IMG/VR virus record: IMGVR_UViG_3300042350_004528
Coordinates: 186,001-250,000 of that record
DNA length: 64,000 bases
Reading direction: 5' to 3' (one strand)
In this document: one piece after another, positions 314-32,331 of the stretch
Numbering within the stretch: position 1 is the stretch's first letter
Layout: every line of letters begins with the position of its first letter
Notes under the pieces: generated by a model
Told to the model about the DNA's origin: nothing
What the model saw: the letters and a program-made list of their open reading frames with translations, nothing else
Database searches by the model: none
Translations under genes and position numbers: made by a program

Positions 314-399
314 ATCTGTTTGTTTTGATTTGATGATACAAATGTAGGTGTAATTTTTTTAACCCGCAAATTTTAACGCAAATTTTTTTATCTTTTTTT

Positions 400-498
400 T
401 TGTTTAACTTTTCGGGCAAAACATTAAACACAAAAAGTATCGTGTAGGTTGGAGTATACTCTCCCGACTTGTTCAGCCCGCCCGTTGTCTTTAACAAC
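400..498 (-). ncRNA. Putative structured small RNA 1 (three-way junction)
   Basis: Array promoter at 503-534 with no ATG-initiated ORF; stem CGGGCGGGC/GUUUUGCCCG enclosing GGAG-AGUAUA-CUCC and ACAC..GUGU hairpins. Confidence 0.55.
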
Positions 499-502
499 AA
501 TA

Positions 503-534
503 CAAAGGTAAATGAAATAAATTTAACTTGCAAA
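503..534 (-). promoter_or_regulatory. Array promoter (representative copy)
   Basis: TTTG(534-531)-20 nt-TACCTTTG(510-503). Confidence 0.85.
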
Positions 535-691
535 CTTTAACACAAATTTCTTTGTTTTTTTTTTGACTCATTTTAAGCCGTTTTAAGACACTCTAACAAC
601 TAAACCATACGAACATATACCTTTGTTCCTTTCGTTTAATCTGAGCATAAAAAAAGGGGCGATTTGCCCCTTTCTTTGTTTCTTGTTTACC

Positions 692-925
692 TTACCAAAC
701 CAAAACCGCTGGGTCTTCCGTTTGGGCGATTTGTTCCGCCTTTGTTTTTAACTCGGTCATTTGAGCGATTAAAACCTCATAGGTCGGTCTTTGATTTGTT
801 TTGTAACCCAAAATTCGTTTGGCACAATCCCTCGCTGAAATTCGGCTCATTTTCATTCCTGTTTTTTTCTCGAACTCTAAGCCGCGAAGGCATACTACGA
901 TTTGAAAAAGTGATGTTGTTGTCAT
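692..925 (-). CDS. Hypothetical protein, 77 aa
   Basis: Start corrected to MTTT after promoter and A-rich leader; terminator ~650-672. Confidence 0.8.
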   Translation of the reverse strand: MTTTSLFQIVVCLRGLEFEKKTGMKMSRISARDCAKRILGYKTNQRPTYEVLIAQMTELKTKAEQIAQTEDPAVLVW

Positions 926-989
926 TGTTTGTTTGTTTTGATAGTTCAAAGATAAACGAAATAAATTTAACTTGCAAATTTTAACATAA

Positions 990-1016
990 AAAAAAGGGGA
1001 ATTTCTTCCCCTTTCT
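990..1016 (-). terminator. Intrinsic terminator GGGGAA-GAAA-TTCCCC + U tract (similar copies ~1240, 2801, 6661, 17538; + strand ~25958)
   Basis: GC stem, GAAA tetraloop, flanking A/T tracts. Confidence 0.85.
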
Positions 1017-1032
1017 TTGTTTCTTGTTTACC

Positions 1033-1173
1033 TTAAAAATTTCTTCCCGAAATTTTATATTTGTCTTCTTTTGGATTACCCCAAAACCAATTGTTAAGTT
1101 TACGAACTATAACTATTGATAGCCAAATGGTAAGAAAAAATATGGGCAATCCGATAATAAAGAAATCTTTCAT
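1033..1173 (-). CDS. Small membrane protein, 46 aa
   Basis: MKDFFIIGLPIFFLTIWLSIVIV TM segment; own promoter and terminator. Confidence 0.75.
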   Translation of the reverse strand: MKDFFIIGLPIFFLTIWLSIVIVRKLNNWFWGNPKEDKYKISGRNF

Positions 1174-1282
1174 AGGTTTGTTTGTTTTGTTGATATAAAG
1201 ATAAGTTAAATTTATTTCATTTGCAAGTTTTAACATAAAAAAAGGGGAATTTCTTCCCCTTTGTTTGCATTAGCACTTTTGT

Positions 1283-1348
1283 TTACATTAGCACAGCCAT
1301 GATTAACAAAGCACCGCAAAAAAGCGTTAAGACGAATAGAATACTCAT
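1283..1348 (-). CDS. 21-aa hydrophobic peptide MSILFVLTLFCGALLIMAVLM
   Basis: Only ORF between an array promoter (1371-1401) and a terminator (~1240-1262). Confidence 0.62.
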   Translation of the reverse strand: MSILFVLTLFCGALLIMAVLM

Positions 1349-1465
1349 TGTTTATTTTGATTTGTTGATACAAAGATAAGTTAAATTTATTTCATTTGCA
1401 AGTTTTAACATAAAAAAAAGGGAACTTTTTTTGTTCCCTCTCTTTTGATCCACAACCCTATTCTT

Positions 1466-2017
1466 TTAATATGAACAACCTTTTGATTTAACAAAGGGAA
1501 TAAAAACCCCGAAGTTTGCACTAACTTGTTTTTGTGTGTTTATATCAACCCTAACCCAACCAACATAATAGTTAAGATACAAACCCCCAACCAAAGTGTT
1601 TATGTTTTTGCGACAACTTAAAACGCTGAACTCCCCGACACTTGTTTTTGTGTAGTTTGTGTATGTTTCTCTTTGATTAAAGTTTAACCCTGCGTGAACC
1701 CCAACCCGAACTGCGTTATCATTGTTCAACACTTTACCAACCAACAACTTTGTGTTTGTTTCTTTTGTTGATATGTTTCTAACCTCGTAATTGTTGTATT
1801 GTGGGTGTTGTTCGGGTGCAACATAATCATATTGAAACAAAGGTGCTTGTTCCCCTTGTTTAATACAACCATAAGAAACTGAACCATAGTAACCCCAATT
1901 GTTTGCGTCAACCCCCAGGGTTATATCGTTTAACTTTGTGTTTGTTCCTACCAACATTTGTCCGTTTGCAACCATTGAAGAAACTCCGAGTGCGATTGAG
2001 AAAATTAACTTTTTCAT
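1466..2017 (-). CDS. Secreted, putative outer-membrane beta-barrel-like protein, 183 aa
   Basis: Signal peptide MKKLIFSIALGVSSMVANG; alternating hydrophobic/aromatic strands. Confidence 0.65.
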   Translation of the reverse strand: MKKLIFSIALGVSSMVANGQMLVGTNTKLNDITLGVDANNWGYYGSVSYGCIKQGEQAPLFQYDYVAPEQHPQYNNYEVRNISTKETNTKLLVGKVLNNDNAVRVGVHAGLNFNQRETYTNYTKTSVGEFSVLSCRKNINTLVGGLYLNYYVGWVRVDINTQKQVSANFGVFIPFVKSKGCSY

Positions 2018-2119
2018 TTGTTTTGTTTGATTTGATAACACAAAGATATGTTAAATTTATTTCATTTGCAAATTTTAACATAAAAAAAGGGGACTTTTTT
2101 GTCCCCCTTTTTTGTTCGG

Positions 2120-2185
2120 TTAATCTAACTTGTTGCTGACAAACGAACCGATAGCAACAAGAATTAAAGCTATTAATAGTCCCAT
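2120..2185 (-). CDS. 21-aa hydrophobic peptide MGLLIALILVAIGSFVSNKLD
   Basis: Between gene 2192..2404 and its terminator; manual translation. Confidence 0.55.
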   Translation of the reverse strand: MGLLIALILVAIGSFVSNKLD

Positions 2186-2191
2186 AGTTTT

Positions 2192-2404
2192 TTATATGTT
2201 ATTTGTTTGACAAAACCTATCAAAATAGGCTTCTTCTTGGGCTTGAACATAACGAGATTCATCCGTTATTGTTTCACTTGGGGAATAACTTGGGTGGTAC
2301 GCTAATTTACGATTTACATCATAAACAATTGTGTCCCCCTTTTGTAGTCTTTTACCACTTGCGGCACATTTGCTACTGAATTTGGCTACGATTATTTTTA
2401 ACAT
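2192..2404 (-). CDS. Hypothetical protein, 70 aa
   Basis: Start corrected to MLKII. Confidence 0.8.
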   Translation of the reverse strand: MLKIIVAKFSSKCAASGKRLQKGDTIVYDVNRKLAYHPSYSPSETITDESRYVQAQEEAYFDRFCQTNNI

Positions 2405-2518
2405 TGTTTGTTTGTTTTGATAGTTCAAAGATAAACGAAATAAATTTAACTTGCAAATTTTAACATAAAAAAAGGGTAAATTTCTTTACCCCCTTTTCAA
2501 ACATTATGAACAACAAAT

Positions 2519-2746
2519 TTATTTTATCTTTTCCGCGAAATAGTTTACAACATCGGGAATGTGTTTTTTGTAGTACGGCTGATTTTCCATGCACCACTTT
2601 TTAACCTCTTCTTTTGTTGTGAAACCTTTGTTACCCCAACTTGAAGCGTTTGATTGAATTTGATTGAATGTTGGCTCCAAGTCGTTGATGAAGTCGCGAA
2701 CTGTCCAACCCTCCCAAATGTGTTTGTCTAAATTTACTTTTGCCAT
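2519..2746 (-). CDS. Hypothetical protein, 75 aa
   Basis: Start corrected to MAKVN. Confidence 0.82.
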   Translation of the reverse strand: MAKVNLDKHIWEGWTVRDFINDLEPTFNQIQSNASSWGNKGFTTKEEVKKWCMENQPYYKKHIPDVVNYFAEKIK

Positions 2747-2830
2747 TGTTTGTTTGATTTGTTGATGCAAAGATAAATGAAATAAATTTAACTTGCAAAT
2801 AAAAAGGGGAATTTCTTCCCCTTTCTTTTT

Positions 2831-3019
2831 TTAGTTATAAGCATCGCAAGTGTGGTGCTTGTGTCTTTCAGGTTTAATCGGTGCATAGTGTGTTTTGTAC
2901 GCATCGCACTGAACATACTTTGTGCGTTTTTTATGTTTCTTTAACTTGATACCATCGTTTGCAAAACTTGTTCCCGTTGCCATAACTGAAACCAACAATA
3001 AAATAAATAACTTTTTCAT
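2831..3019 (-). CDS. Small secreted basic protein with two CDAY motifs, 62 aa
   Basis: Signal peptide ending TSFA; QCDAYK and TCDAYN. Confidence 0.75.
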   Translation of the reverse strand: MKKLFILLLVSVMATGTSFANDGIKLKKHKKRTKYVQCDAYKTHYAPIKPERHKHHTCDAYN

Positions 3020-3132
3020 AGGGTTTGTTTTTGATTATGATGTAAAAGTATATAGATTAAATTTAATGTGCAAATTTTTTGCAAAAAAAAAGGAAGAAAT
3101 TTCTTTCTTCCAATTTTCGTATCAAATCAAAC

Positions 3133-3510
3133 TTAATCTTTCGTTACTTGCATTGTCTTTTCAAGCAACAATATTCGTGGTACAATGTACTCAACATATT
3201 CGGGTGTAAGTTGTTTGTTGTATATCTCCATAACAAAATCAACCGAAGGTGTTGCACCATAGAATGTTCCCAGCAAAACATTTGTTTCTTTGTGTCTTAT
3301 CTCGGTGTAACTTTCCTTTGTGGTTTTCGCCACTTTAATATCAAAGACACAACAAAATTCGGGGTCGGACTGCAAAGCGTTTAGTTTGGCTATATCCGTT
3401 TCGTTTGTGTAGTGAACCTCCAAAACAAGTTTGGGCTCTTTCGGGTTTGTACTCGCTTTAACTCCAACAAAGGTAGTTAAGCAAATGAGTGTTAAAAGTA
3501 TTTGTTTCAT
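3133..3510 (-). CDS. Secreted hypothetical protein, 125 aa
   Basis: Signal peptide ending VKA; ATG 4 nt after -7 box. Confidence 0.8.
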   Translation of the reverse strand: MKQILLTLICLTTFVGVKASTNPKEPKLVLEVHYTNETDIAKLNALQSDPEFCCVFDIKVAKTTKESYTEIRHKETNVLLGTFYGATPSVDFVMEIYNKQLTPEYVEYIVPRILLLEKTMQVTKD

Positions 3511-3546
3511 ACTACAAATATAAACATTTTATTTTTAATATGCAAA

Positions 3547-3699
3547 TTAAACTCTCCCCTCAATGATTGCCGCGAACCAAAGTGATGCGTAAAGAAACGC
3601 AGACATAAAAATCATAAAGGCGACTGAACCATAAAACTCTTTCGGATCTTCCTTGCGAAAATCATTCAGCGTGATGAACATTTCTTTAATATCTTTCAT
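3547..3699 (-). CDS. Small membrane protein, 50 aa
   Basis: Manual translation MKDIKEMF..YGSVAFMIFMSAFLYASLWFAAIIEGRV; own promoter. Confidence 0.72.
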   Translation of the reverse strand: MKDIKEMFITLNDFRKEDPKEFYGSVAFMIFMSAFLYASLWFAAIIEGRV

Positions 3700-3761
3700 T
3701 GTTTGTTTGTTTTTGTTGATACAAAGATAAGTGAAATAAATTTAACTTGCAAATTTTAATT

Positions 3762-3922
3762 CAAAAAAAGGGGAAATTTCTTTCCCCAATTAAATGCATT
3801 TTGCCTTTTTCTGTTTATTGACGGATTACAAAAGACAAACGTCATCCGTTCTCACCCACCTTATAAATCCTTCCCGTGCACGAAACAAGAAACTGGGGCG
3901 GGATTGTTTCTACTTGTTATTT
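3762..3922 (-). ncRNA. Putative small RNA 3 (~160 nt)
   Basis: Array promoter 3927-3958 and terminator ~3762-3790 bracket a GC-richer segment with no ORF at a normal start position; helices AAUCC/GGAUU and ACGGAU/AUCCGU. Confidence 0.5.
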
Positions 3923-3962
3923 AATACAAAGATAAACGAAATAAATTTAATGTGCAAATTTT

Positions 3963-4160
3963 TTACCAAGTGAAATCATTTTTATTCGCATTCAAAGAAA
4001 GGAATAAAATGAATAGAAACAATAAACCTGTTCCGAAGAAGAATGCAAACTCTTCGTTCTTGATGTAACCCTTTGATTGCAGGGCAAGTCCAACGCTTAC
4101 TCCAATGGTTATCAAACCAAGGATTGAAAGCACGAATGGGATAACTTTAACTTTTTTCAT
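3963..4160 (-). CDS. Two-TM membrane protein, 65 aa
   Basis: Start corrected to MKKVK; two hydrophobic helices. Confidence 0.78.
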   Translation of the reverse strand: MKKVKVIPFVLSILGLITIGVSVGLALQSKGYIKNEEFAFFFGTGLLFLFILFLSLNANKNDFTW

Positions 4161-4200
4161 ATTTTTTTGTTTTGATAGTTCAAAGATAAACGAAATAAAT

Positions 4201-4344
4201 TTAACTTGCAAACTTTTGTTTAAGTTTTTTTCGGTTATATGTTTTACCCGAAGGTTTGCTCCTTGTTATCATATTCCTACGAATGATTTGAGCAATGTGT
4301 CTTTCTGACAAACCTTGTTTCCAATCTTGTGTTTCGTTTTTCAT
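4201..4344 (-). CDS. Small basic protein, 47 aa
   Basis: Manual translation MKNETQDW..KLKQKFAS; stop lies inside the next promoter. Confidence 0.68.
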   Translation of the reverse strand: MKNETQDWKQGLSERHIAQIIRRNMITRSKPSGKTYNRKKLKQKFAS

Positions 4345-4382
4345 AACACAAAGATAAATGAAATAAATTTAATGTGCAAATT

Positions 4383-4724
4383 TTATTCTGCAAAATTATC
4401 TTTACCACATTCAGGACAAACTTTTTCCTCATACAAAGTATGGTCTTGTGGATTATGTTCGTTGTCAACCATTACCGATTTCAACTCATCCTTACCACCA
4501 ATCCAACCACAATTTTCGCAATAAAGGTCGTATTCAATTTCAATAACCTCATCAAAAATTTCCTTGTATTCAGTAACCAATTCTTTATCGGTGAAATTCG
4601 CATACCCTTTCATCCCGTATTCAAATATACTGGCAACATAACTATTGTCACCTCGTTCGTGTTCCGATATGATTGTGTTGATGTCGTTATCTACCAACTT
4701 GTCTATGATTTCCTGTCTTTTCAT
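4383..4724 (-). CDS. Hypothetical protein with C-terminal Zn ribbon, 113 aa
   Basis: CENC..CPEC. Confidence 0.8.
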   Translation of the reverse strand: MKRQEIIDKLVDNDINTIISEHERGDNSYVASIFEYGMKGYANFTDKELVTEYKEIFDEVIEIEYDLYCENCGWIGGKDELKSVMVDNEHNPQDHTLYEEKVCPECGKDNFAE

Positions 4725-4751
4725 AACTTAAAAGTTTTTCTTATATTGTAC

Positions 4752-4802
4752 TCATCGCCAACCTTGTTTAACTATTACGTTCTTTCTACCTTGCTTTCGC
4801 CA
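4752..4802 (-). pseudogene. Start-less remnant of the 3' end of a paralogue of 16275..16508
   Basis: WRKQGRKNVIVKQGWR* versus WIKQGKKNVIIKQGWQ*. Confidence 0.7.
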
Positions 4803-4806
4803 TATT

Positions 4807-4917
4807 TTAGTTATATCGTTGTTTACAAATCACCCAAATGCTATAAAGAATAAGTGGTGAAAAAAGAATTAATTGCCCCAAACAAACCATTCTTTGTCTT
4901 GCTGTTAATCTTTTCAT
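4807..4917 (-). CDS. 36-aa membrane peptide
   Basis: MKRLTARQRMVCLGQLILFSPLILYSIWVICKQRYN; ATG 4 nt after variant -7 box TATCTTTA. Confidence 0.6.
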   Translation of the reverse strand: MKRLTARQRMVCLGQLILFSPLILYSIWVICKQRYN

Positions 4918-4941
4918 AGTTTAAAGATAAGTTAAATAAAT

Positions 4942-5106
4942 TTAACTTGCAAACTTTGTTTCAATTTTTTTATCCCCAACAAAGTTATACCCAGAGTTAA
5001 ACCACCATAGGGCCAAACGGATTGACCAGTAAATGCTTCGTTTTTGTTTCCTTCCATTCAGATAGCATTCCCACGCTTTCCGAATTCTAAACTTGTTTAT
5101 TCGCAT
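4942..5106 (-). CDS. Hypothetical protein, 54 aa
   Basis: Manual translation MRINKF..ETKFAS; overlaps stop of upstream gene. Confidence 0.6.
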   Translation of the reverse strand: MRINKFRIRKAWECYLNGRKQKRSIYWSIRLALWWFNSGYNFVGDKKIETKFAS

Positions 5107-5315
5107 AATTCAACCTCAATGATTTCACAATAGTTTTCCAACTCGTCTAACGGAATTCTACCATAGTTCGTTGATGAATAGTAACCTTGAAACTCGTAAC
5201 GCTTCTTCCATTCAGTTAAGGCGTTCTTTGCTTCCTCAACACTATTGTAAGTGTCGCTGAAATGAATGCTAAACCCATCGGGACTTAACACATCGTATTG
5301 CTTGTTTGATTTCAT
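5097..5315 (-). CDS. Hypothetical protein, 72 aa
   Basis: ORF with array promoter. Confidence 0.82.
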   Translation of the reverse strand: MKSNKQYDVLSPDGFSIHFSDTYNSVEEAKNALTEWKKRYEFQGYYSSTNYGRIPLDELENYCEIIEVELCE

Positions 5316-5418
5316 AGTTCAAAGATAAGTGAAATAAATTTAACTTGCAAATTTTAATACAAAAAAAAGGGGCAGATTTCTCCGCCCACCTTTTTCAAAT
5401 ATGAAAACAAATCAAGTT

Positions 5419-5793
5419 CTATGAAAAGTAAGGTTGTATAACCTCTTTGTCGCTCAAATTAGCTCTCATCTTTGCATACGCTTCCGCTTCTTTATCATCT
5501 TTGTTATAGATGAAATCAACATTGCTTGAAGCGATTGCAAATTGTCCGTTCGCAATACCCCAAAAGTAATAACGAACATTGTCATTCACATCAACTGCAT
5601 TCAATGCCCTCTCGCAAACCTCGTTCAGTTCGGGGAATAACTTAACGCTTCCCGTGATACTTGAAACGATTGCAAGTTTCATACTGCCGTTGGCGAATTC
5701 ATCAGCTACCTTGTTCTCACCAATGTTTCTTAAACCCTCAATAAGGATTTGTTTGTAGCTACCCGAAGGTGCTTTTGGAAATGGATTGTTCAT
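5419..5793 (-). CDS. Hypothetical protein, 124 aa
   Basis: ORF, promoter, terminator. Confidence 0.85.
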   Translation of the reverse strand: MNNPFPKAPSGSYKQILIEGLRNIGENKVADEFANGSMKLAIVSSITGSVKLFPELNEVCERALNAVDVNDNVRYYFWGIANGQFAIASSNVDFIYNKDDKEAEAYAKMRANLSDKEVIQPYFS

Positions 5794-5835
5794 ATCGTTT
5801 TGTTTTTTGATACAGCAAAGATAAGTGTAATAAAT

Positions 5836-6006
5836 TTAACTCGCAAGTATTTTTTTAATTTCTTTTAATCGATCCAAAACTTTATCCATTTCTTTTGAAA
5901 TCTTTGTGTGGGTTCTATGTTTGCTATTAGGTTCCCACAACTCGGACAAAGTTTTATATCGTTCTTTGAGCCGTATCTCCTCAACAATCAATACCGAATG
6001 TTCCAT
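5836..6006 (-). CDS. Hypothetical protein, 56 aa
   Basis: Start corrected to MEHS; ends ILAS inside next promoter. Confidence 0.72.
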   Translation of the reverse strand: MEHSVLIVEEIRLKERYKTLSELWEPNSKHRTHTKISKEMDKVLDRLKEIKKILAS

Positions 6007-6008
6007 TG

Positions 6009-6212
6009 TTAATTCAGTATTGATTGGTAAGGGATTGGAAATTCCAAGAAAGGTGCGGACAACCATTTGTCAATTTTGATTGTCTTGTCGGTAATCTTTT
6101 CCTTTCGGTAAACCTTTACGCAAGTTTCCAAGTTTTCATCAGCGAATATGGTTTCGGTGCTTTCATCATCATTTGTGCGAAATACCTCGTACCAAGTTTT
6201 TGTGTTTTCCAT
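6009..6212 (-). CDS. Hypothetical protein, 67 aa
   Basis: ORF with array promoter. Confidence 0.78.
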   Translation of the reverse strand: MENTKTWYEVFRTNDDESTETIFADENLETCVKVYRKEKITDKTIKIDKWLSAPFLEFPIPYQSILN

Positions 6213-6285
6213 TTTTTCTTTTTCCTAATTTTGTGAGTGCAAAGGTATATATAATAAATTTAACTCACAAGTTTTCAACACATTT

Positions 6286-6606
6286 TTACCAAGTTTTTGG
6301 ATATTTGTCCAATGTTTCTTGCGGATATAAAACTTCGTTTCCGTTGTTCAAAACATCTTCCCACCAACGAATACCAATCTGCAATCGTGGTACTGCGAAC
6401 TTCATAACATCTTCATCGTGGACACGAAAGAACAAATCGTTTCTTCCACCTGTTCCCTCTTCGCCAGGTGTTGGCAAAGTTAAAACTTCTTCGCAATAAA
6501 CTCCGCGAACATTAAACTCTTCTTTGAGCCAATTTTCAAAATCTTTGGCACAACTCTTTCCAACAATTGTTCCGTGCCAAACACATACTTGATTAAAATT
6601 TTCCAT
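6286..6606 (-). CDS. Hypothetical protein, 106 aa
   Basis: Start corrected to MENFN; GGRNDLFF motif. Confidence 0.85.
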   Translation of the reverse strand: MENFNQVCVWHGTIVGKSCAKDFENWLKEEFNVRGVYCEEVLTLPTPGEEGTGGRNDLFFRVHDEDVMKFAVPRLQIGIRWWEDVLNNGNEVLYPQETLDKYPKTW

Positions 6607-6694
6607 TTGTTTTGTTTTTGATATAACAAAAATAAATGAAATAAATTTAATGTGCAAATAAAAAGGGGAATTTCTTCCCCTTTCTTATCCACAA

Positions 6695-7099
6695 TTAGCG
6701 GTCAAAATATGTTTCTTTGATACCTTGTTTCTTTTCCATTGACTGCGACATAAGGTACATTGTTTCCCCCATTGGTTTATCGTGGTGAGAAATAACAACT
6801 TCAATGATACCCTTGTTGTCGGTCGGGTGAAACAACATTGTAAACTCCCCAGTGTTCGGTGCAAGTTTACGGATTAAAGTTTCTGCACTATCCGTTTCAA
6901 ATTCGGTGTACCCTGCAACATTTCTCCAAGTCAAAGAAAGTCCGTAACAAAAGAATTTCTTTGTACGCATTTTCTTCATCATTGTTTTTACTTCGTACAC
7001 AAAATCTTCCCAATAGATTTGTGCTTCCATTTCATCTTCAACTTCGGGCATATCCCAACCCGCTAAAATTCTTTTTGTTTCTTTGATTAAAGTTTCCAT
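6695..7099 (-). CDS. Hypothetical protein, 134 aa
   Basis: Start corrected to METLI; SHHDKPMGE motif. Confidence 0.85.
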   Translation of the reverse strand: METLIKETKRILAGWDMPEVEDEMEAQIYWEDFVYEVKTMMKKMRTKKFFCYGLSLTWRNVAGYTEFETDSAETLIRKLAPNTGEFTMLFHPTDNKGIIEVVISHHDKPMGETMYLMSQSMEKKQGIKETYFDR

Positions 7100-7210
7100 T
7101 TGCTTGTTTGTTTTTGTTGATACAAATATAAATGAAATAAATTTAACTTGCAAATTTTAACACAAAAAAAAAGGGCGGATTTCTCCACCCCTTTTTTCAA
7201 TCGGAAAGAA

Positions 7211-7567: not shown

Positions 7568-7629
7568 CTTGTTTATTTTTGATTATGATACAAAGATAAA
7601 TGAAATAAATTTAACTTGCAAATTTTACC

Positions 7630-7905: not shown

Positions 7906-8045
7906 TTTGTTTGTTTTTGTTGATACAAAGATAAATGAAATAAATTTAACTTGCAAATTTCAGGGATCTAAGTTATCCACATTGTTATAAACAAAAAAGG
8001 GTGGGGATTTCCCCCACCCAATCATCAAATAAACAAACAAGCAAT

Positions 8046-25016: not shown

Positions 25017-25123
25017 TCCCCTCTTTTCCTGAATTCTGGATCGGATCAAAAAAAAATGTAAAAAAGTTTGCGTATTAAATTTATTCCACTTATCTTTGTA
25101 TCATAATTAAAAACCAAAATAAA

Positions 25124-25936: not shown

Positions 25937-26037
25937 CTCACAATACACTTGAAAGAAAGGGGGAAGAAATTCCCTCTTTTTTTTTGCACATTAAATTTAA
26001 TTTACTTATCTTTGTTATCGAAATCAAAAACAATAAT

Positions 26038-27913: not shown

Positions 27914-27991
27914 ATGACAAAGGTAATTTAAATTTATTTAATATGCAAGAAACTGGGGAAGTTTTTTTCTCCCCCAGTTAATTTTATTACA

Positions 27992-28837
27992 TTATTCCCA
28001 AGGTGTATCAAAGTTATCGAATGGGTTTTCTGGGAAGCAAGAGTTCTCATCATTCCATTCTTCTTCCGAAATTACATTTCCGTCCTCACCAACATAAACT
28101 CTTTGTTCAACATTGTAGTTATATACAACGCCATCCAAAACATATTCTGGTTCACCCTCCGCTAACATAAGTTCACCATCCTCGCTGTAAGCACAACCCG
28201 CGAACCAGTTTCCAGTTTCCATAAACACCAGTTTGAAGTTCAAGTTCGGAAACATTTTGATAACTTTTCCCAACCAGTTGATTGGTGGCGACCAGGCGGA
28301 GTTGAAGTTAATTGTAATATAGTTTTCGTTATCTGTATCGAAACCCATTTCCTCTGACGAGCAATCCCACTTTGTTCCCCAGTTCATAACATTCCAGTCG
28401 TACCAGTTGTCAGTCCCATACTCTTCAATAAGAGCCTCTCGCTTCTCTTCTGTACCATTGGCACATTCAATTAGTTCTGGAATTTCAATTGGTATCTTTG
28501 CTTCATTCAATTGGTTGTTGATGAAGTCCCTGTCGGTTTTGTCTGTGGTCTCCAGAAGTTTTTTCTCCAGATCAGCGATCAACTCTTGTTGTTTCTCGAT
28601 ACGATTTTTTGCGTGGTTCACATCCCACTCGTTCACCCATTCACAATCACGAGGTGGTGATATGGTTCTGGAAAGTGGTTCTGGTGTCGGTAAGTAGTTC
28701 GACATTCTCCAGACAAGTTCTGTTTCACCTGTTTTGCTGTAACGCACAGGTTCTTCGGTAATTCCCATTGCAAGGAATTGTTTGAATTCTTTGGTATCAC
28801 CCGATACCTCTAAACGATTTTCGCACCAGTTTGGCAT
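27992..28837 (-). CDS. YubB/DUF1281 ferredoxin-like domain protein
   Basis: MPNWCEN, WYDW..NWGTKW, FNSAWSPP. Confidence 0.82.
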   Translation of the reverse strand: MPNWCENRLEVSGDTKEFKQFLAMGITEEPVRYSKTGETELVWRMSNYLPTPEPLSRTISPPRDCEWVNEWDVNHAKNRIEKQQELIADLEKKLLETTDKTDRDFINNQLNEAKIPIEIPELIECANGTEEKREALIEEYGTDNWYDWNVMNWGTKWDCSSEEMGFDTDNENYITINFNSAWSPPINWLGKVIKMFPNLNFKLVFMETGNWFAGCAYSEDGELMLAEGEPEYVLDGVVYNYNVEQRVYVGEDGNVISEEEWNDENSCFPENPFDNFDTPWE

Positions 28838-28979
28838 AGTATATTGTTTTTGATTTCGAGAGCAAATATACACCATATATTTTTAACTCGCAAACTTTAT
28901 CACAAAAAACTTTTTTCATTTTTATTTGCACATTAAATTTATTGCACTTATCTTTGTGTCGAAATCAAAAATAAAAATC

Positions 28980-29723
28980 ATGTTTAATCTAGGGTACACG
29001 TACAAGAAGCCTACCACACTGTTTGGTACGCAGAATGCAAAGACAAAGAAAGGTGAAAAACTGGGGTATACAACCTATATCCTGTATATGTCACCAGAAA
29101 AACAAAACACGCTTGGCAAGAACATTTGCCCGAAAGCCACAGCAGGCTGTTCGAAGTCATGTCTCTTCACAGCGGGTCGTGGCAAGTTTAGCAATGTCAT
29201 GAAAGGTCGTCTGAATAAGACTGAATACTTTCTTCGTGACAAGGTGAACTTCATGGACGATGTTGTTAAGGAAATTAAAAAGGGTATTAAAAAACATGGT
29301 GCGGGTGCAATGTGCGTTCGTCTCAATGGTACCTCTGATATTCCTTACGAGAACATTCCAGTGGGTGGTTTTAAAAATGTCATGGAAATGTTTCCTGATG
29401 TGCAATTTTACGATTACACAAAGATCTATTCAAGGTTGACAAAGCAATTGCCTGCGAACTATCACCTTACCTTTTCCAGGGCGGAGACAGAGGACAACCA
29501 ACGCGAAGCGGACAAAGCACTCGCACTTGGTTTCAATGTCGCTGTTGTTTTCGCTGTTAAGGACGAGACAGAACTTCCCGCTGAATACAACAATGCAAAG
29601 GTTATCAATGGTGACGAGCACGATCTTACTTTCTTACATGGCAATGGTGTTGTCGTGGGGTTGAAAGCAAAGGGTGAAGCAAAGAAAGATGATACAGGTT
29701 TCGTAGTAAGGGGTTGTAACTAA
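28980..29723 (+). CDS. Gp88-like phage protein (Cys cluster, radical-SAM-like)
   Basis: CPKATAGCSKSCL, RLNGTSD, FYDYTK, NYHLTFS, GLKAKG. Confidence 0.78.
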   Translation: MFNLGYTYKKPTTLFGTQNAKTKKGEKLGYTTYILYMSPEKQNTLGKNICPKATAGCSKSCLFTAGRGKFSNVMKGRLNKTEYFLRDKVNFMDDVVKEIKKGIKKHGAGAMCVRLNGTSDIPYENIPVGGFKNVMEMFPDVQFYDYTKIYSRLTKQLPANYHLTFSRAETEDNQREADKALALGFNVAVVFAVKDETELPAEYNNAKVINGDEHDLTFLHGNGVVVGLKAKGEAKKDDTGFVVRGCN

Positions 29724-29784
29724 CCCCTTATTTTTTTTTGCATTCAGACTTGCAAGTTAAATTAAATTCATATACCTTTGTCAT

Positions 29785-30102
29785 ATGAAAGCAAAACAAA
29801 ACAATTATCCAAAGTTTATCATCCGTTGGAACGGTCGATTCCATAAGGGTCTGATAACCGAAGACTTCGTCTTCTACTGTAACTACCAGGAAGGAGATGA
29901 TAACGGCAATGTTGAGATGTATCGCAGGGTTGAATCTAACCCGCATGACAGGGACAACAGCGGGCTAGAATTGGTATCGAACAATTACTTTGCTAGCGTT
30001 GGTCTCTTCGAAGCGCTCGAGGCGGGCGTCTGGGAATACATCTCACCAACCATGAAACTGAATTATAAACTAGCAAAAGAAGCGGGACAATTCGATGAGT
30101 AA
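29785..30102 (+). CDS. Hypothetical protein, 105 aa
   Basis: Leaderless-type start. Confidence 0.8.
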   Translation: MKAKQNNYPKFIIRWNGRFHKGLITEDFVFYCNYQEGDDNGNVEMYRRVESNPHDRDNSGLELVSNNYFASVGLFEALEAGVWEYISPTMKLNYKLAKEAGQFDE

Positions 30103-30406
30103 GAAAGAAAGAAAAATATACGAGACCTCTGTAATATACAGAGGGTACCAGACATTTAAACTGTGCTGGGCCACCTCATATGCTGAAGCTGCCAGGATCT
30201 TGGATGTGGCCCCTAGTTACCTTAAGAATTACGGCCTGTCTTATAAACGCGATCGGGATTTTGACTTCGAGGGTTGTTATGGGTATATCGATTCAGGTGA
30301 GATCATCTTTGGTGAACCAGGACGACCTGATCTGATGAGAAAACTTATGCCATGGGCGGAGTTGACGGAGATCGTTGATACTTATATTAAAGAGAAATAC
30401 GAATGA
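30095..30406 (+). CDS. Hypothetical protein, 103 aa
   Basis: Coupled ORF. Confidence 0.75.
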   Translation: MSKKERKIYETSVIYRGYQTFKLCWATSYAEAARILDVAPSYLKNYGLSYKRDRDFDFEGCYGYIDSGEIIFGEPGRPDLMRKLMPWAELTEIVDTYIKEKYE

Positions 30407-30768
30407 GACCAGAATTCAAGATATACAGGAATCTACACAGAGACTGTTTCAGTGTGATGAGATGGAACCAGGAGAAGAGAGGGTACCGTCTGTATCAGCA
30501 TGTCAAGGATCTAGAAGCTTACGGCGTAACGTTCAGGGTATCTCAGGCTGGACGGGCCAGGGTTCTGGAGACGAAGCAAAAGAATGTACATGCATTCGTA
30601 TGCTGCCAAGAATTCAAGCTTGCTTCTGGGGCCGCGAACCTGGGTGAGGAGATCTACTACAATCCATACAAGATGGAAACGTTCAGGATCAAGAGCTCGG
30701 ACGAATCGATTCTGAATGCAGATTCGGTTATCATGACGAATAATAAATGTTATTTAAATGTGATCTGA
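30403..30768 (+). CDS. Phage hypothetical protein, 121 aa
   Basis: YRNLH..FSV, KNVHAFV, YNPY. Confidence 0.82.
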   Translation: MRPEFKIYRNLHRDCFSVMRWNQEKRGYRLYQHVKDLEAYGVTFRVSQAGRARVLETKQKNVHAFVCCQEFKLASGAANLGEEIYYNPYKMETFRIKSSDESILNADSVIMTNNKCYLNVI

Positions 30769-30772
30769 ATTC

Positions 30773-31324
30773 ATGGGCGGAGATGAGAGAAGCGCGATAG
30801 AAGTGATCGCTGAATTCACGTCACCATTTGAGGATTCACTTAACGTGTTAATCCTAGGTGATCATATAGATGATCTTGAGGCTGCTGAAGTAAAGGCGGC
30901 GTTCGATCGAACCAGGAATGAATTCCTGAGTCTGCCATCGGTGGACGAGGAGAAGATGGCCCCGATCAAATATATTAAAATTAATACATCCGAATTTTTC
31001 AGGGGGAAGATCAGTAATAAAATTAAGAAGGAACCCTGTGTTGTATATCTGGATCACGAGCTCAGCAAAAATGCTTTGAACATCCTCACCAATAATAACA
31101 GTGAGGTGGATGATCTGGAGGAAATGCTTCTGGAGAAATATCTTTTCGGGATCAACCAGGAAAAATTTATTCTGGATCTCACCAGCTGTCTGGATGAAAG
31201 GATCGAACTTCTCATGAGTGCCATGGACGCCAGAGCTGGGGAATTCAATTATGTTCTGGTGGAAAAGTATCTGGCGATCTGGATATATGCGCTTGACGAA
31301 TTCGCCCCATTTCAGTTCGATTAA
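30773..31324 (+). CDS. Hypothetical protein, 183 aa
   Basis: ORF track. Confidence 0.75.
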   Translation: MGGDERSAIEVIAEFTSPFEDSLNVLILGDHIDDLEAAEVKAAFDRTRNEFLSLPSVDEEKMAPIKYIKINTSEFFRGKISNKIKKEPCVVYLDHELSKNALNILTNNNSEVDDLEEMLLEKYLFGINQEKFILDLTSCLDERIELLMSAMDARAGEFNYVLVEKYLAIWIYALDEFAPFQFD

Positions 31325-31386
31325 AAAAAAGATAAAAAAAGTTTCAAAAAAACTTGCATAATAAAAAAAGTTGTATTACATTTGTA

Positions 31387-31470
31387 GTCCTTAAGAGTTC
31401 AGGCCTGGGAGGCAACCCTTTCTCTCTGTTTTGTTTTTGATTTCAAAAAGTCCTCCCAGGTTCTGTTCTC
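31387..31470 (+). ncRNA. Putative small RNA 4 (hairpin with anti-leader loop)
   Basis: Array-type promoter 31353-31384 with no ORF; CCUGGGAGG(31404-12)/CCUCCCAGG(31452-60) stem; loop UUUUGUUUUUGAUUUC. Confidence 0.62.
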
Positions 31471-31609
31471 GAATTCAAGTTTAAGTTTCTACTAGAATTC
31501 AACCCCGTATAATTTTTAGAATTCATATTGCTGGATCTTCCAGAATTCATATCCGTAACTTTTTTAGAATTCATATATAAATAAAAAAGGTGAACCCTTT
31601 TAGAATTCA
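31471..31609. repeat. GAATTCA repeats at 24-bp period
   Basis: GAATTCA at 31471, 31495, 31519, 31543, 31567, then 31603. Confidence 0.9.
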
Positions 31610-31634
31610 CCTTTCAGTTTTTTTATGTATTCAC

Positions 31635-31892
31635 TTATTCGTCATCCGCTTCTTTCTTGCGTCTGGTCTTTCTGGTTGGTAAACCTCTTTTCTCACGTAT
31701 CCTGTCCCTGAGTTCCATCACCTTCAGGATGGCTGTGATCACCGCGATGAAAAGACCGAGGATCACACCGATCAATTGTAGGAGATCTGTTGCACTCATG
31801 GTGATTGATAACATTGATGATAATATTCCGTATTCAGGTTTTTTAGTTAGTGTATCCGTTAATTGGGTGATGAGTGTGTCCTTCATTTTCAA
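31635..31892 (-). CDS. Holin-like small membrane protein
   Basis: TM helix followed by very basic tail; ACTATTTAT upstream. Confidence 0.5.
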   Translation of the reverse strand: MKMKDTLITQLTDTLTKKPEYGILSSMLSITMSATDLLQLIGVILGLFIAVITAILKVMELRDRIREKRGLPTRKTRRKKEADDE

Positions 31893-32037
31893 TACTGTTT
31901 TTGTTTATTTTTTTGTATACAAATAAATAGTATGAATGAATAGAAAACGCCCGTTGTTAACTCGAATACATTATTTTTTTTTAAAAAAATTTGCACATTA
32001 AATTTTAATGTGTTATCTTTGATTAAATTAAAATAAT

Positions 32038-32331
32038 ATGAATGCAATAAATACAGCCTATACATTGGGTTTGGTCGCCATGTATTTTATCATGGGCGGA
32101 GAATTCACATTCTGGGTGTTCATGACCTCGGTCTTGATCGCACTGATTCCACTGACAACTTCGAACCTGTTATTCGCGACCCCGATCGTGGTTCTGATCT
32201 GGTGTTTCTTTTTCACCAGCAGTACAGTTTACGATTCCGACTTCGCGTGGTTATGCATCCTGTATGCACCCTTCCATTACACCTCATTCATATCCCATGT
32301 CATAGACGCCATCGAGGGCATTTTCGATTAA
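32038..32331 (+). CDS. Multi-TM membrane protein, 97 aa
   Basis: Hydrophobic; last array promoter 31990-32021. Confidence 0.78.
   Translation: MNAINTAYTLGLVAMYFIMGGEFTFWVFMTSVLIALIPLTTSNLLFATPIVVLIWCFFFTSSTVYDSDFAWLCILYAPFHYTSFISHVIDAIEGIFD

What the first reader, a model, noticed from the sequence alone, without database searches (positions are those of the whole stretch)
339..32331. 32-kb array of self-contained promoter-gene-terminator cassettes built on one repeated promoter
Seen: ~60-65 copies of one ~32-bp promoter, each followed by an A-rich leader (or directly by ATG), one or two small unrelated ORFs, and often the same GAAA-loop terminator. Cassettes run - over 1-18.5 kb, + over 18.5-27.4 kb, then alternate. 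Established: the motif is the Bacteroidota housekeeping promoter, and T4-type phages have analogous promoter/stem-loop cassettes (PeSLs) linked to modular shuffling. Inference: this is an integron-like but integrase-free platform for gene capture and exchange, where the promoter is both the expression signal and the recombination joint. It may also act as a sink for host RNA polymerase.
Basis: partly seen in the sequence, partly recalled or inferred. Interest (0 to 1): 0.85.

Follow-up and report, generated by a model that had tools for sequence, protein, structure and literature searches.

The report
Repeated-promoter gene cassette array in phage
A 32-kb stretch of a very large lake-water phage of Bacteroidota carries 64 copies of one strong host-type promoter, each driving its own small unrelated gene, and comparison with related phages shows that these repeated promoter/terminator units are also where genes get deleted, swapped, moved and flipped, much as in the promoter/stem-loop cassettes already known from T4-type phages.

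Summary
A 34-nt matrix finds 64 copies between 339 and 32021 (0.05 expected). There are 42 on the - strand up to 18494, 15 on the + strand from 18524 to 26014, then a mix. The motif fits the Bacteroidota promoter (-33 TTTG, AT-rich -28 to -17, -7 TAnnTTTG).

59 copies are followed by an ATG ORF: 12 at exactly +5 (leaderless) and 46 after a 17-30 nt leader (60% A, 3% G). About a third are preceded by a hairpin terminator, often with a GAAA loop. The 66 ORFs have no paralogues among themselves and almost no known function.

The window belongs to a huge freshwater phage. Relatives at 75-99% identity carry the same promoter. Of 13 structural differences from close relatives, 5 are whole-cassette indels flanked by 23-102 nt repeats of the regulatory unit, and 2-3 are gene replacements with chimeric promoters. 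More distant relatives show translocations and inversions ending at oppositely oriented promoters.

Two limits apply. The right half (21.8-32.3 kb) keeps its gene order. Junctions are no more promoter-centred than intergenic positions in general.

There is no integrase and no fixed crossover point, so this is PeSL-like homologous shuffling, not an integron. Early timing, mini-circles and an RNA polymerase sink remain untested.

The parts
339..18494 (-). Left arm of the array: 42 promoter copies on the - strand, each driving one (sometimes two) small ORFs of 36-275 aa. This is the plastic half.
   Evidence: Matrix scan. The low coordinates of the copies are 339, 503, 947, 1196, 1371, 2041, 2426, 2768, 3043, 3515, 3722, 3927, 4181, 4349, 4922, 5320, 5816, 6240, 6627, 7123, 7591, 7926, 8307, 8714, 8965, 9205, 9556, 9931, 10707, 11098, 11673, 11977, 12735, 13194, 13588, 14326, 15310, 16080, 16865, 17493, 17936 and 18461. 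Each is 34 nt long.
18524..26014 (+). Right arm: 15 promoter copies on the + strand driving ORFs of 63-270 aa. From about 21.8 kb onwards the gene order is conserved in relatives.
   Evidence: Copies start at 18524, 18754, 19092, 19568, 19913, 20354, 20821, 21419, 21802, 22686, 22982, 23708, 24343, 25065 and 25981.
27918..32021 (.). Mixed-orientation end of the array: copies at 27918(-), 28863(-), 28923(+), 29747(+), 31351(+, weak) and 31988(+). The copy at 29747 heads a four-gene operon.
3722..3755 (-). Best-scoring single promoter copy (50.6 bits). It has TTTG at -36 to -33, an AT-rich spacer at -28 to -17, and TATCTTTG at -12 to -5.
   Evidence: Position numbering follows PMC6847099.
993..1014 (-). 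Example of the recurrent GAAA-loop intrinsic terminator (9-bp stem followed by a T-run). Near-identical copies lie at 1241-1262, 2803-2824 and 17539-17560.
979..1227 (-). Event E1: a whole cassette (promoter 1196-1229, 46-aa ORF 1033-1173, terminator 993-1014) that is absent from two 96% relatives. It is flanked by direct repeats of about 91-94 nt made of leader, promoter and terminator.
   Evidence: Base-level alignment with L015. HSP overlaps in L015 and L029.
1449..2115 (-). Event E2: a cassette (promoter 2041-2074 and 183-aa secreted-looking ORF 1466-2017) absent from L015. The junction lies on the 3' side of two similar terminator hairpins, with a repeat of about 102 nt. A different, larger deletion (about 1268-2113) is seen in L047.
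2190..2521 (-). Event E3: a terminator-promoter-gene unit (ORF 2192-2404) absent from L066. The junction runs from a stop codon to the next start with no flanking repeat, so this is a counter-example.
4389..4935 (-). Event E5: a slot whose genes (113-aa ORF 4383-4724 and 36-aa ORF 4807-4917) are replaced by an unrelated gene in relatives at 96-99% identity and in the 75% lineage. The edges lie at the upstream edge of promoter 4349-4382 and in the middle of the spacer of promoter 4922-4955.
9575..9917 (-). Event E6: a slot whose 105-aa ORF (9590-9907) is replaced by an unrelated 328-bp gene in L066. The edges lie in the spacer of promoter 9556-9589 and in the leader of promoter 9931-9964.
16865..16954 (-). 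Event E7 site: relative L073 carries one extra leaderless cassette here, flanked by a 23-nt exact repeat of the -33 half of the promoter.
17936..19125 (.). Divergence zone. It contains back-to-back promoters 18461-18494(-) and 18524-18557(+). The segment bounded by the oppositely oriented promoters 17936-17969(-) and 19092-19125(+) is inverted in the L058, L052 and L061 lineage, and a further promoter-bounded inversion explains R1.
10001..10152 (+). The only + strand copy inside the left arm. It drives an ORF-less unit of about 115 nt that ends in a GCAA-loop terminator. This is a candidate small RNA.
   Evidence: The unit is 100% identical in the 75% lineage. No Rfam family matches.
373..536 (-). 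Promoter 503-536 followed by a second ORF-less unit of about 125 nt. It shares a GGGCGGGC stretch with the 10035 unit.
   Evidence: Fold z-score is -2.3. No Rfam match.
36074..63771 (-). Outside the array: 7 weaker copies with the same -33 and -7 boxes but a different spacer, at 36074, 38993, 42983, 47987, 50834, 52150 and 63738. Each heads a long operon, or in one case tRNA-Met (52065-52139). They serve as a contrast class.

Best explanation
This is the accessory, probably early, gene region of a very large lytic phage of a freshwater Bacteroidota host. It is built from monocistronic cassettes.

**Structure of a cassette.** Each cassette consists of:
- an optional intrinsic terminator that insulates it from the gene upstream;
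- a short AT-rich stretch;
- a near-ideal host primary-sigma promoter (-33 TTTG, AT-rich -28 to -17, -7 TAnnTTTG);
- either a G-poor, A-rich unstructured leader of about 22 nt or no leader at all (ATG at +1);
- one small ORF.

**Expression (inferred).** The unmodified host RNA polymerase reads all 64 promoters as soon as the DNA enters the cell. This yields many small proteins, presumably for host takeover or counter-defence.

**Recombination.** The regulatory unit is repeated every 200-900 bp with 20-70 nt exact matches, so it also serves as a substrate for ordinary homologous recombination.
- Exchange between direct copies deletes or inserts one cassette.
- Double exchange with a co-infecting relative swaps the gene in a slot.
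- Exchange between inverted copies flips segments around the divergence point.
- Every product keeps a working promoter in front of every gene, so recombinants are viable.

This is the mechanism proposed for PeSLs of T4-type phages, here with a different promoter type in an unrelated phage.

**Shown versus inferred.** Shown here: the motif, its layout, its match to the host-type consensus, and the cassette-level differences between relatives with repeat-flanked or chimeric junctions. Inferred: promoter activity and strength, early timing, the recombination enzyme, and whether plasticity is selected for or a by-product.
For: **Motif and layout.** There are 64 copies against 0.05 expected, with correct orientation and a fixed distance to ATG in 59 of 64.

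**Match to host-type promoters.** F. johnsoniae promoters mapped from RNA-seq-predicted transcription start sites have T-12, A-11, T-8, T-7, T-6 and G-5, a start site 4-5 nt after the element, and AT-rich motifs near -18 and -28 (PMC6847099). The same -33 and -7 boxes with a different spacer precede the phage tRNA and the metabolic operons.

**Phage identity.** Identical contigs are filed as viral, one of them 298,833 bp. The SPFH protein is 64% identical to one in the 642-kb uncultured phage LR756502.1. The extended motif is almost absent from 185,579 bacterial and archaeal genomes: 4 single hits, 3 of them in Bacteroidota.

**Recombination at the repeats.**
- E1, E2, E2b, E4 and E7 are clean one- or two-cassette indels flanked by 23-102 nt direct repeats of the unit.
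- E5 and E6 are replacements by unrelated genes inside backgrounds that are 96-99% identical, with breaks inside promoter spacers or leaders.
- 6 of 23 orthologous genes carry a different promoter spacer subtype in the 75% lineage.
- 6 of 37 shared genes are displaced in R1, and reshuffling is heavy in L052, L078 and L090.
- Three arrangements of the divergence zone can be interconverted by inversions between oppositely oriented promoters.
- Event density follows repeat homogeneity: the median longest exact match is 30, 25 and 20 nt in the three thirds of the array.

**Precedent.** The PeSL mechanism and comparable evidence (10 of 14 differential ORFans next to a PeSL) are described in PMC2839356.
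Against: - No transcript data exist, so start sites, promoter strength and timing are unproven.
- Junction edges are enriched near promoters only against random positions (16 of 25 within 50 nt, 32% expected). They are not enriched against intergenic positions (78% expected). Selection against breaks inside genes could therefore explain much of the pattern.
- E3, E10 and E11 have junctions unrelated to the repeat, and E13 is a diverged allele rather than a replacement.
- The right half has about 20 promoters but a stable gene order.
- Orthologous promoters are only slightly more alike than random pairs (0.86 against 0.81), and there is no lineage-specific consensus. Conservation therefore looks like selection on function rather than homogenisation.
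- All relatives are metagenome contigs. Assemblers can skip or switch strains at repeats, so events seen in a single contig (E2, E2b, E4, E6, E7) could be artefacts. E1, E5 and the translocations are seen in several independent assemblies.
Confidence: 0.72

Rival explanations
1. The repeat is only a strong promoter kept similar by selection. Gene gain, loss and movement occur by ordinary rare recombination anywhere, and only events with junctions between genes survive. The association with the promoter is then a by-product of one promoter per gene.
For: - Junction edges are no closer to promoters than intergenic positions in general.
- E3, E10 and E11 do not use the repeat.
- The right half is stable despite about 20 promoters.
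- Promoter sets of two lineages share one consensus without lineage-specific changes.
Against: - Five indels are flanked by 23-102 nt direct repeats of the unit, with the crossover inside the repeat. This is the signature of homologous exchange, not of random joining.
- Chimeric promoters occur at E5 and E6.
- Spacer subtype switches of three adjacent bases occur in 6 of 23 orthologues.
- Event density follows the length of exact matches.
Confidence: 0.18
2. This is a dedicated gene-capture platform in the integron sense. Cassettes excise as promoter-bounded circles and are inserted at a defined site in the repeat by a phage-encoded or host-encoded site-specific enzyme that recognises the conserved spacer.
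For: - The spacer is conserved well beyond the -33 and -7 boxes and contains the palindrome TAAATTTA.
- Non-array promoters of the same phage work with a different spacer.
- Three copies carry the spacer as an exact reverse complement.
- PeSL mini-circles were detected physically in T4-type phages (PMC2839356).
Against: - No integrase, transposase or nuclease family was found among the 69 array ORFs in Pfam, NCBIfam or PADLOC.
- Crossover intervals differ between events: terminator, -33 half, mid-spacer and leader.
- Every cassette has its own promoter, and there are no attC-like sites.
- The AT-rich spacer sits where F. johnsoniae promoters also have AT-rich motifs.
Confidence: 0.07
3. The motif is read by a phage-specific sigma factor or phage RNA polymerase rather than by the unmodified host enzyme, so the array need not be early.
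For: - Huge phages often encode their own transcription factors.
- The 34-nt conservation is far tighter than in host promoters.
- The extended motif is virtually absent from bacterial genomes.
Against: - The conserved boxes coincide position by position with the host consensus.
- No sigma or polymerase gene is seen in the window.
Confidence: 0.08
4. The array also acts as a sink that titrates host RNA polymerase away from host genes.
For: The only support is the number and near-consensus quality of the promoters. PeSL promoters were too strong to clone intact in E. coli (PMC2839356).
Against: There are no data. 64 sites on one or a few entering genomes are few compared with the number of polymerase molecules in a cell, so the effect would depend on replication.
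Confidence: 0.1

Closest known systems
PeSLs (promoter-early stem-loops) in the hyperplastic regions of T4-type phages (Arbiol et al. 2010, PMC2839356; Comeau et al. 2014, PMC4122927)
   Same: - Both are composite repeats of about 100 bp made of a terminator hairpin, an AT-rich stretch, a host primary-sigma promoter and a translation start.
- Both are concentrated upstream of small ORFans in a plastic region.
- In both, close relatives differ by indels and replacements bounded by the repeats.
- The proportion of repeat-associated events is similar: about 8 of 13 here, 10 of 14 there.
   Different: - The promoter is the Bacteroidota -33/-7 type, not sigma-70.
- There is no Shine-Dalgarno sequence. 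Translation starts from an A-rich leader or a leaderless ATG.
- The hairpin lies upstream of the promoter and is present in only about a third of copies, whereas PeSLs have five hairpin placements.
- The 64 copies form one contiguous 32-kb block with divergent arms.
- The phage is an unrelated huge phage from lake water.
- Promoter and terminator activity and mini-circles were shown for PeSLs but not here.
Early promoter sets of large lytic phages that rely on host polymerase, such as the T4 early promoters (review PMC2988021) and the SPO1 host-takeover module (from my own knowledge)
   Same: Both have many strong promoters that are more conserved than the consensus requires, in front of small non-essential genes and read by the unmodified host enzyme. 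The conservation extends beyond the two boxes.
   Different: Density here is about one promoter per gene over 32 kb. The promoter type and host phylum differ. Timing has not been measured here.
Bacteroidota primary-sigma promoter (TTTG / TAnnTTTG; Baez et al. 2019, PMC6847099)
   Same: The -7 box positions, the -33 box, the AT-rich motifs near -18 and -28, and the A-rich G-poor leaders all match.
   Different: In host promoters the -33 box is weak and the spacer is variable. The phage copies fix nearly all 34 positions. 12 copies are leaderless, whereas 87% of the predicted F. johnsoniae transcripts have a leader longer than 10 nt.
Integrons
   Same: Both are arrays of small unrelated single-gene cassettes whose content differs between close relatives.
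   Different: There is no integrase, no attC or attI site and no common promoter. Cassettes here carry their own promoters, and exchange looks like general homologous recombination.

Membership tests
PeSL-type regulatory cassettes | A repeated intergenic motif containing the host primary-sigma promoter consensus | tested here: met
   64 copies were found against 0.05 expected. The boxes match the Bacteroidota consensus position by position. The promoter type differs from the sigma-70 type of the original family.
PeSL-type regulatory cassettes | A stem-loop (terminator or attenuator) as part of the motif | tested here: inconclusive
   Hairpin plus T-run sites number 53 against 13.8 expected in 1-20000. 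However, only 19 of 64 promoters have a strong hairpin in the 45 nt upstream, so the stem-loop is a frequent but not constant component.
PeSL-type regulatory cassettes | Concentrated in a plastic region, immediately upstream of ORFans | tested here: met
   59 of 64 copies sit directly before an ORF. Only 9 of 69 ORFs have a Pfam hit, and most of those hits are domains of unknown function. Outside the array the density falls from 2 per kb to 0.2 per kb.
PeSL-type regulatory cassettes | Indels and replacements between close relatives bounded by the motifs | tested here: met
   About 8 of 13 events are bounded by the motifs: E1, E2, E2b, E4, E5, E6 and E7, plus one edge of E13. Caveat: the enrichment does not hold against intergenic positions.
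PeSL-type regulatory cassettes | Excised mini-circles carrying one chimeric motif | not testable with these tools
   Only assembled contigs of public runs were available. They end at the repeats, and their joints have sides of about 30 nt.
PeSL-type regulatory cassettes | Host genome is a T4-type myovirus | tested here: not met
   No nucleotide match to any deposited phage. The only protein-level relative found among deposited phages is the 642-kb uncultured phage LR756502.1, plus weak Vibrio phage hits to the SPFH domain. No T4 core gene was seen among the window proteins scanned. I therefore file this as working like PeSLs, not as a member of that family.
Bacteroidota primary-sigma promoter | -7 element TAnnTTTG (no G at the two n positions) and -33 TTTG about 20 nt upstream | tested here: met
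   All 64 copies carry TA at matrix positions 27-28 and TTTG (occasionally TTTA or TTCG) at positions 31-34. The n positions are T, C or A. TTG is at positions 4-6. The consensus is from PMC6847099.
Bacteroidota primary-sigma promoter | Transcription starts 4-5 nt after the -7 element | not testable with these tools
   No RNA run holds the sequence. Indirect support: 12 ORFs start at exactly +5 after the final G, which is where a leaderless mRNA would begin.
Integron | Tyrosine-recombinase integrase next to the array | tested here: not met
   No integrase family was found among the 69 array ORFs in Pfam, NCBIfam or PADLOC, nor among the 10 large ORFs scanned in the rest of the window.
Integron | Promoterless cassettes bounded by attC sites and expressed from one common promoter | tested here: not met
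   Each cassette has its own promoter. The repeated unit is that promoter, and the crossover positions vary.

The most novel reading that the evidence does not exclude
The array is a selected gene-exchange device rather than a by-product of promoter reuse. In this reading, the spacer, which is conserved beyond what promoter function needs and is exactly inverted in three copies, is recognised by a dedicated factor. Cassettes would then circulate as promoter-bounded mini-circles among the co-occurring lake phages that share this promoter. That would make it an integrase-free functional counterpart of an integron in a huge phage.
Probability: 0.12. Interest if true: 0.8.

Novelty: new variant of a known kind. 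Interest (0 to 1): 0.52.

Why it matters
- It extends promoter/terminator-mediated modular shuffling, known only from T4-type phages of Proteobacteria, to an unrelated huge phage of Bacteroidota with a completely different promoter grammar. This suggests that the shuffling is a general consequence, or a general strategy, of reusing one strong regulatory unit.
- The family of lake phages found here spans identities from 75% to 100% across many samples. That makes it a natural series for measuring rates of cassette turnover.
- The array is a ready catalogue of 64 natural variants of a near-ideal Bacteroidota promoter, with matched leaders, leaderless starts and compact GNRA-loop terminators. Such parts are useful for genetic tools in a phylum where E. 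coli parts do not work.
- The roughly 66 small unrelated ORFs are candidates for host-takeover or counter-defence functions in Bacteroidota.

Tried and rejected
- **Nucleotide search of 1-25000 against deposited phages:** no match. A 61-nt promoter-plus-leader query gave only two chance-level hits.
- **LR756502.1, the closest deposited phage:** no copy of the motif in 42 kb around the shared SPFH gene or in 555-605 kb. The array is not a shared trait of that relative.
- **Search for circles and inversions in reads:** all 24 runs are kept as assembled contigs. Laid on 1-6000, they end at the repeats, and every 'joint' has a side of about 30 nt, which is just the promoter matching another copy. 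This is uninformative and was not counted as evidence.
- **RNA evidence for start sites:** no metatranscriptome holds the sequence.
- **Global alignment of a rearranged stretch with MAFFT:** it misaligned around large indels. I replaced it with HSP chaining and ungapped edge views.
- **Junction statistics:** significant only against a random-position null, not against an intergenic null. I therefore do not use this as proof that the promoter itself is the joint.
- **Concerted evolution:** rejected as the main cause of similarity. There is no lineage-specific consensus, and within-genome and between-genome identities are about 0.79-0.82.
- **Rfam, PADLOC and NCBIfam on the array:** nothing beyond one tRNA outside the array and two marginal hits.
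- **Mobile-element reading (a MITE, or an integron with a recombinase):** rejected for lack of any recombinase or transposase and because the crossover points vary.

Full report
**1. What is in the sequence**

Reading 1-6000 shows the same sequence of about 34 nt before nearly every small gene on the - strand. I built a position matrix iteratively from the first matches. Its consensus is AATTTGCAAGTTAAATTTATTTCAnTTATCTTTG.

- The matrix finds 64 copies scoring at least 19 bits between 339 and 32021. Most score 35-50 bits. Markov-shuffled sequence gives 0.05 copies.
- A plain 31-nt pattern with up to three mismatches gives 30 matches against none in 100 shuffles.
- The left boundary is sharp. 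A 96% relative that extends 10 kb further left has no copy there.
- To the right of 32 kb only seven weaker copies occur. They keep the two boxes but have another spacer, and each heads a long operon or the tRNA-Met gene.

**2. Anatomy of a cassette**

- 59 of the 64 copies are followed within 45 nt by an ATG that opens an ORF of at least 25 codons.
- The ATG lies at exactly +5 after the final G in 12 cases. In 46 cases it lies 17-30 nt downstream, after a leader that is 60% A, 20% C, 18% T and 3% G.
- Five copies have no such ORF: 503, 1371, 3927, 10001 and 31351. The copy at 1371 drives a very short peptide, the others none.
- Terminator-like hairpins followed by a T-run number 53 in the first 20 kb, against 13.8 +/- 3.4 expected.
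- About 17 distinct hairpins lie on the transcribed strand just upstream of a promoter. Roughly 14 of these have a GAAA or other GNRA loop, including four near-identical copies with a 9-bp stem.
- 19 of 64 promoters have a hairpin of -10 kcal/mol or stronger in the 45 nt upstream, against 10% of random 45-mers.
- The full composite is therefore terminator, AT-rich stretch, promoter and leader, about 100 nt in all. It is complete in about a third of cassettes, mainly in the first 4 kb.

The ORFs are unrelated to each other: no pair among 66 gives a BLASTP hit. Only nine have a Pfam match, each to a different family:

| Pfam family | ORF |
|---|---|
| GP88 | 28980-29723 |
| DUF932 | 25124-25936 |
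| DUF4241 | 23035-23649 |
| DUF1281_C | 27992-28876 |
| SprT-like, with a weaker overlapping YgjP-like hit | 17970-18440 |
| DUF6915 | 12755-13171 |
| DUF3846 | 8343-8693 |
| Phage_L5_gp82 | not located |

28 ORFs match 28 different PHROG families, nearly all without a known function. PADLOC and NCBIfam add nothing.

**3. What the motif is**

With the final G set to -5, the copies place TA at -12/-11, TTTG at -8 to -5, TTTG at -36 to -33, and the conserved TTAAATTTATTT at -28 to -17.

Baez et al. mapped F. johnsoniae promoters from start sites predicted from RNA-seq and report the following (PMC6847099):

- T-12, A-11, T-8, T-7, T-6 and G-5 are nearly invariant.
- There is no G at the two middle positions of the -7 box.
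- The start site lies 4-5 nt after the element.
- AT-rich motifs near -18 and -28 are more pronounced than the -33 box.
- Leaders are A-rich and unstructured, in place of Shine-Dalgarno sequences.

The phage copies fit every one of these points. An ATG at +5 after the G would be the first base of the transcript, so the 12 such cassettes are predicted to be leaderless. Activity itself has not been tested.

The non-array promoters of the same window keep the boxes but use another spacer. The array-specific spacer is therefore either a class determinant, for strength or timing, or a trace of common descent. This cannot be decided here.

**4. Whose DNA it is**

- The first 25 kb has no nucleotide match among 50,697 deposited phages.
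- The 620-aa SPFH protein (46100-47962) is 64% identical over 96% of its length to a gene of LR756502.1, a 642-kb uncultured phage.
- The rest of the window encodes nucleotide and cofactor enzymes: NAPRTase, a phosphoribosyltransferase, adenylosuccinate synthetase and a PfkB kinase. It also encodes a tyrosinase and an RNA ligase.
- Searching IMG/VR for 20 nt of the promoter returns contigs that are 100% identical to the window from five different metagenomes, one of them 298,833 bp long.
- Public runs that hold the sequence are lake-water metagenomes.
- In one genome for each of 185,579 bacterial and archaeal species, the extended motif occurs four times, once each. Three of these are in Bacteroidota assemblies.
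- The closest deposited phage does not have the array.

**5. The comparative test**

The promoter searches also returned relatives at several distances:

- about 75% nucleotide identity: R1 (L023 plus L008), L019, L002, L009, L052, L078, L037 and L058;
- 92-97% identity: L015, L029, L066, L073, L056, L040, L041, L057, L059 and L087 (short fragments L028 and L067 are at 88-93%);
- about 99% identity: L047 and L075.

All carry the same promoter. R1 has 42 copies in 18.5 kb.

I chained HSPs between each close relative and the window and inspected every break. This gave thirteen events inside the array.

*Whole-cassette indels flanked by direct repeats of the regulatory unit, with the crossover inside the repeat (five events):*

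| Event | Window position | What differs | Flanking repeat |
|---|---|---|---|
| E1 | 979-1227 | Absent in L015 and L029 | 91-94 nt |
| E2 | 1449-2115 | Absent in L015 | 102 nt; junction beside the terminator hairpins |
| E2b | about 1268-2113 | Absent in L047 | 102 nt |
| E4 | about 2800 | Extra 209-bp cassette in L066 | 72 nt |
| E7 | 16903 | Extra leaderless cassette in L073 | 23-nt exact repeat of the -33 half |

*Replacements of the gene in a slot by an unrelated gene (two to three events):*

- **E5** covers 4389-4935. Its edges lie at the upstream edge of promoter 4349-4382 and in the spacer of promoter 4922-4955. The alternative allele is the one found in all other lineages, so the window allele is the derived one. 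A 53% homologue of the window gene sits in another slot in L052.
- **E6** covers 9575-9917. Its edges lie in the spacer of promoter 9556-9589 and in the leader of promoter 9931-9964. Both alleles are unique to their lineage.
- **E12** replaces gene 7211-7567 in L028. Its edges lie 31-41 nt from the nearest promoters.

*Other events:*

- **E13** is a diverged allele with one edge at a promoter.
- **E3** is a terminator-promoter-gene unit inserted between a stop codon and the next start codon, with no repeat.
- **E10** is a promoterless ORF inserted at a 7-nt microhomology around a start codon.
- **E11** is an internal deletion in gene 16510-16860.
- These last three events do not involve the repeat.

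**6. More distant relatives**

- Of the 47 window genes between 692 and 20258, 37 have a homologue in R1. Six of those lie in a different relative position, and ten are missing.
- L052, L078 and L090 show still more reshuffling of single cassettes.
- Six of 23 orthologous genes have a promoter of another spacer subtype in R1, for example AAATTTATT against AAAAAAATT. That is three adjacent changes, which is more easily explained by exchange than by point mutation.
- Around the divergence point the window, the L058/L052/L061 type and R1 have three different arrangements. Inversion between the oppositely oriented promoters 17936-17969 and 19092-19125 converts the window into the L058 type. A second promoter-to-promoter inversion gives R1. 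In each arrangement every gene keeps a correctly oriented promoter.

**7. Limits of that evidence**

- The right half of the array (about 21.8-32.3 kb, larger genes, about 20 promoters) is collinear in L037 and L058. L041 aligns over 13.3 kb as one 95.9% HSP without an indel. A promoter per gene does not by itself make a region plastic.
- Plasticity follows the homogeneity of the composite. The median longest exact match between copies is 30 nt in 339-10000, 25 nt in 10000-18500 and 20 nt beyond. Cause and effect cannot be separated here.
- Sixteen of 25 junction edges lie within 50 nt of a promoter, against 32% for random positions but 78% for intergenic positions. The statistics alone cannot tell a preferred joint from selection against breaks inside genes. 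The argument rests on the repeat-flanked indels and the chimeric promoters.
- All relatives are metagenome contigs. Assemblers can skip or switch strains at repeats, so events seen in a single contig need confirmation. E1, E5 and the translocations are supported by several independent assemblies.
- Promoter sets of the window and R1 share one consensus. Orthologous promoters are 0.86 identical, against 0.81 for random pairs. The similarity is therefore maintained mainly by selection on function.

**8. Mechanism and comparison**

The best reading is a hyperplastic accessory, probably early, region built from self-contained cassettes. The repeated regulatory unit is first of all an expression signal for the host polymerase. 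Secondarily it is a portable stretch of homology that lets general recombination delete, insert, swap and invert cassettes without producing dead chimeras.

This is the mechanism proposed for PeSLs of T4-type phages. There, about 50 composite sigma-70 promoter/stem-loop motifs per genome lie mostly before ORFans. In that work, 10 of 14 differential ORFans adjoin a PeSL, and mini-circles were detected (PMC2839356; PMC4122927).

The differences here are:

- the promoter grammar;
- the absence of Shine-Dalgarno sequences;
- the leaderless subset of cassettes;
- the hairpin lying upstream of the promoter and being optional;
- the single 32-kb block with divergent arms;
- an unrelated huge phage.

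The array is not an integron. It has no integrase, no attC site and no common promoter, and the crossover points vary. A literature search found no description of such an array in a phage of Bacteroidota.

**9. What could not be tested**

Start sites, timing, promoter strength, circles and the polymerase-sink idea all remain untested. The public runs that hold the phage are available only as assembled contigs. These end at the repeats, and their apparent joints are promoter-to-promoter matches of about 30 nt.

**10. Verdict**

The integron analogy and the sink idea are not supported by any data. I rate this a new variant of a known kind, of moderate interest.

Noticed in passing
window 10001-10152 (+): A promoter copy on the opposite strand inside the left arm drives an ORF-less unit of about 115 nt that ends in a GCAA-loop terminator. 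The first 95 nt or so are 100% identical in the 96% lineage (L066) and in the 75% lineage (L008), where the flanking genes differ by about 25%. No Rfam family matches and the fold z-score is only -0.85. It is a candidate conserved small RNA.
   Followed up: partly
window 373-536 (-): This is a second promoter-driven ORF-less unit of about 125 nt. It starts with the same TATTGT and shares a GGGCGGGC stretch with the 10035 unit. The fold z-score is -2.3 and there is no Rfam match. It is conserved with a few changes in relatives at 96-98% identity.
   Followed up: partly
window 1196-1229, 1371-1404, 2041-2074 (-): Three neighbouring promoter copies carry the 16-nt spacer as the exact reverse complement of the usual one (ATGAAATAAATTTAAC instead of GTTAAATTTATTTCAT), between unchanged -33 and -7 boxes. 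The spacer core TAAATTTA is a palindrome. Possible causes are template switching at a quasi-palindrome or exchange with an inverted copy. The cause is unexplained.
   Followed up: no
window 31471-31609 (+): AGAATTCA, which contains the palindrome GAATTC, occurs at 31494, 31518, 31542 and 31566, an exact 24-bp period. A further copy lies at 31602 and a near copy at 31471. The whole window has 18 copies against 4.7 expected. The cluster follows a weak promoter copy and a long hairpin (about 31406-31463). It looks like an iteron-type or regulator-binding array.
   Followed up: partly
window 52065-52183 (-): A tRNA-Met (CAT anticodon) at 52065-52139 is preceded by its own weak copy of the -33/-7 promoter at 52150-52183.
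   Followed up: partly
window 40759-63483 (-): Long operons encode auxiliary enzymes: a tyrosinase/polyphenol-oxidase-like protein (40759-42210), adenylosuccinate synthetase (44585-45610), an SPFH/band-7 protein (46100-47962), NAPRTase (48288-49817), a phosphoribosyltransferase-like protein (49837-50808), a PfkB kinase (54836-55615) and an RNA ligase (62101-63483). A tyrosinase is an unusual gene to find in a phage.
   Followed up: partly
window 1279-1296: An 18-bp in-frame tandem duplication inside the very small ORF downstream of promoter 1371-1404. It is present in the window and absent from L015.
   Followed up: no
window 19355-19363; L059: A 97-99% relative has an extra promoterless ORF of about 63 codons inserted exactly between two translationally coupled genes, at a 7-nt repeat (ATATGAG) that spans the start codon. 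This is gene gain without the promoter repeat.
   Followed up: partly
window 1-313 (-) and 10169-10684 (-): The gene that runs off the left end of the window, driven by the first promoter copy at 339-372, is about 70% identical at the nucleotide level to the gene at 10169-10684. It is the only paralogous pair seen. Both members also occur in the 75% lineage.
   Followed up: partly
window 9931-10034, 18461-18557, 28863-28956: Three back-to-back divergent promoter pairs, with 27-37 bp between the two -33 ends.
   Followed up: no
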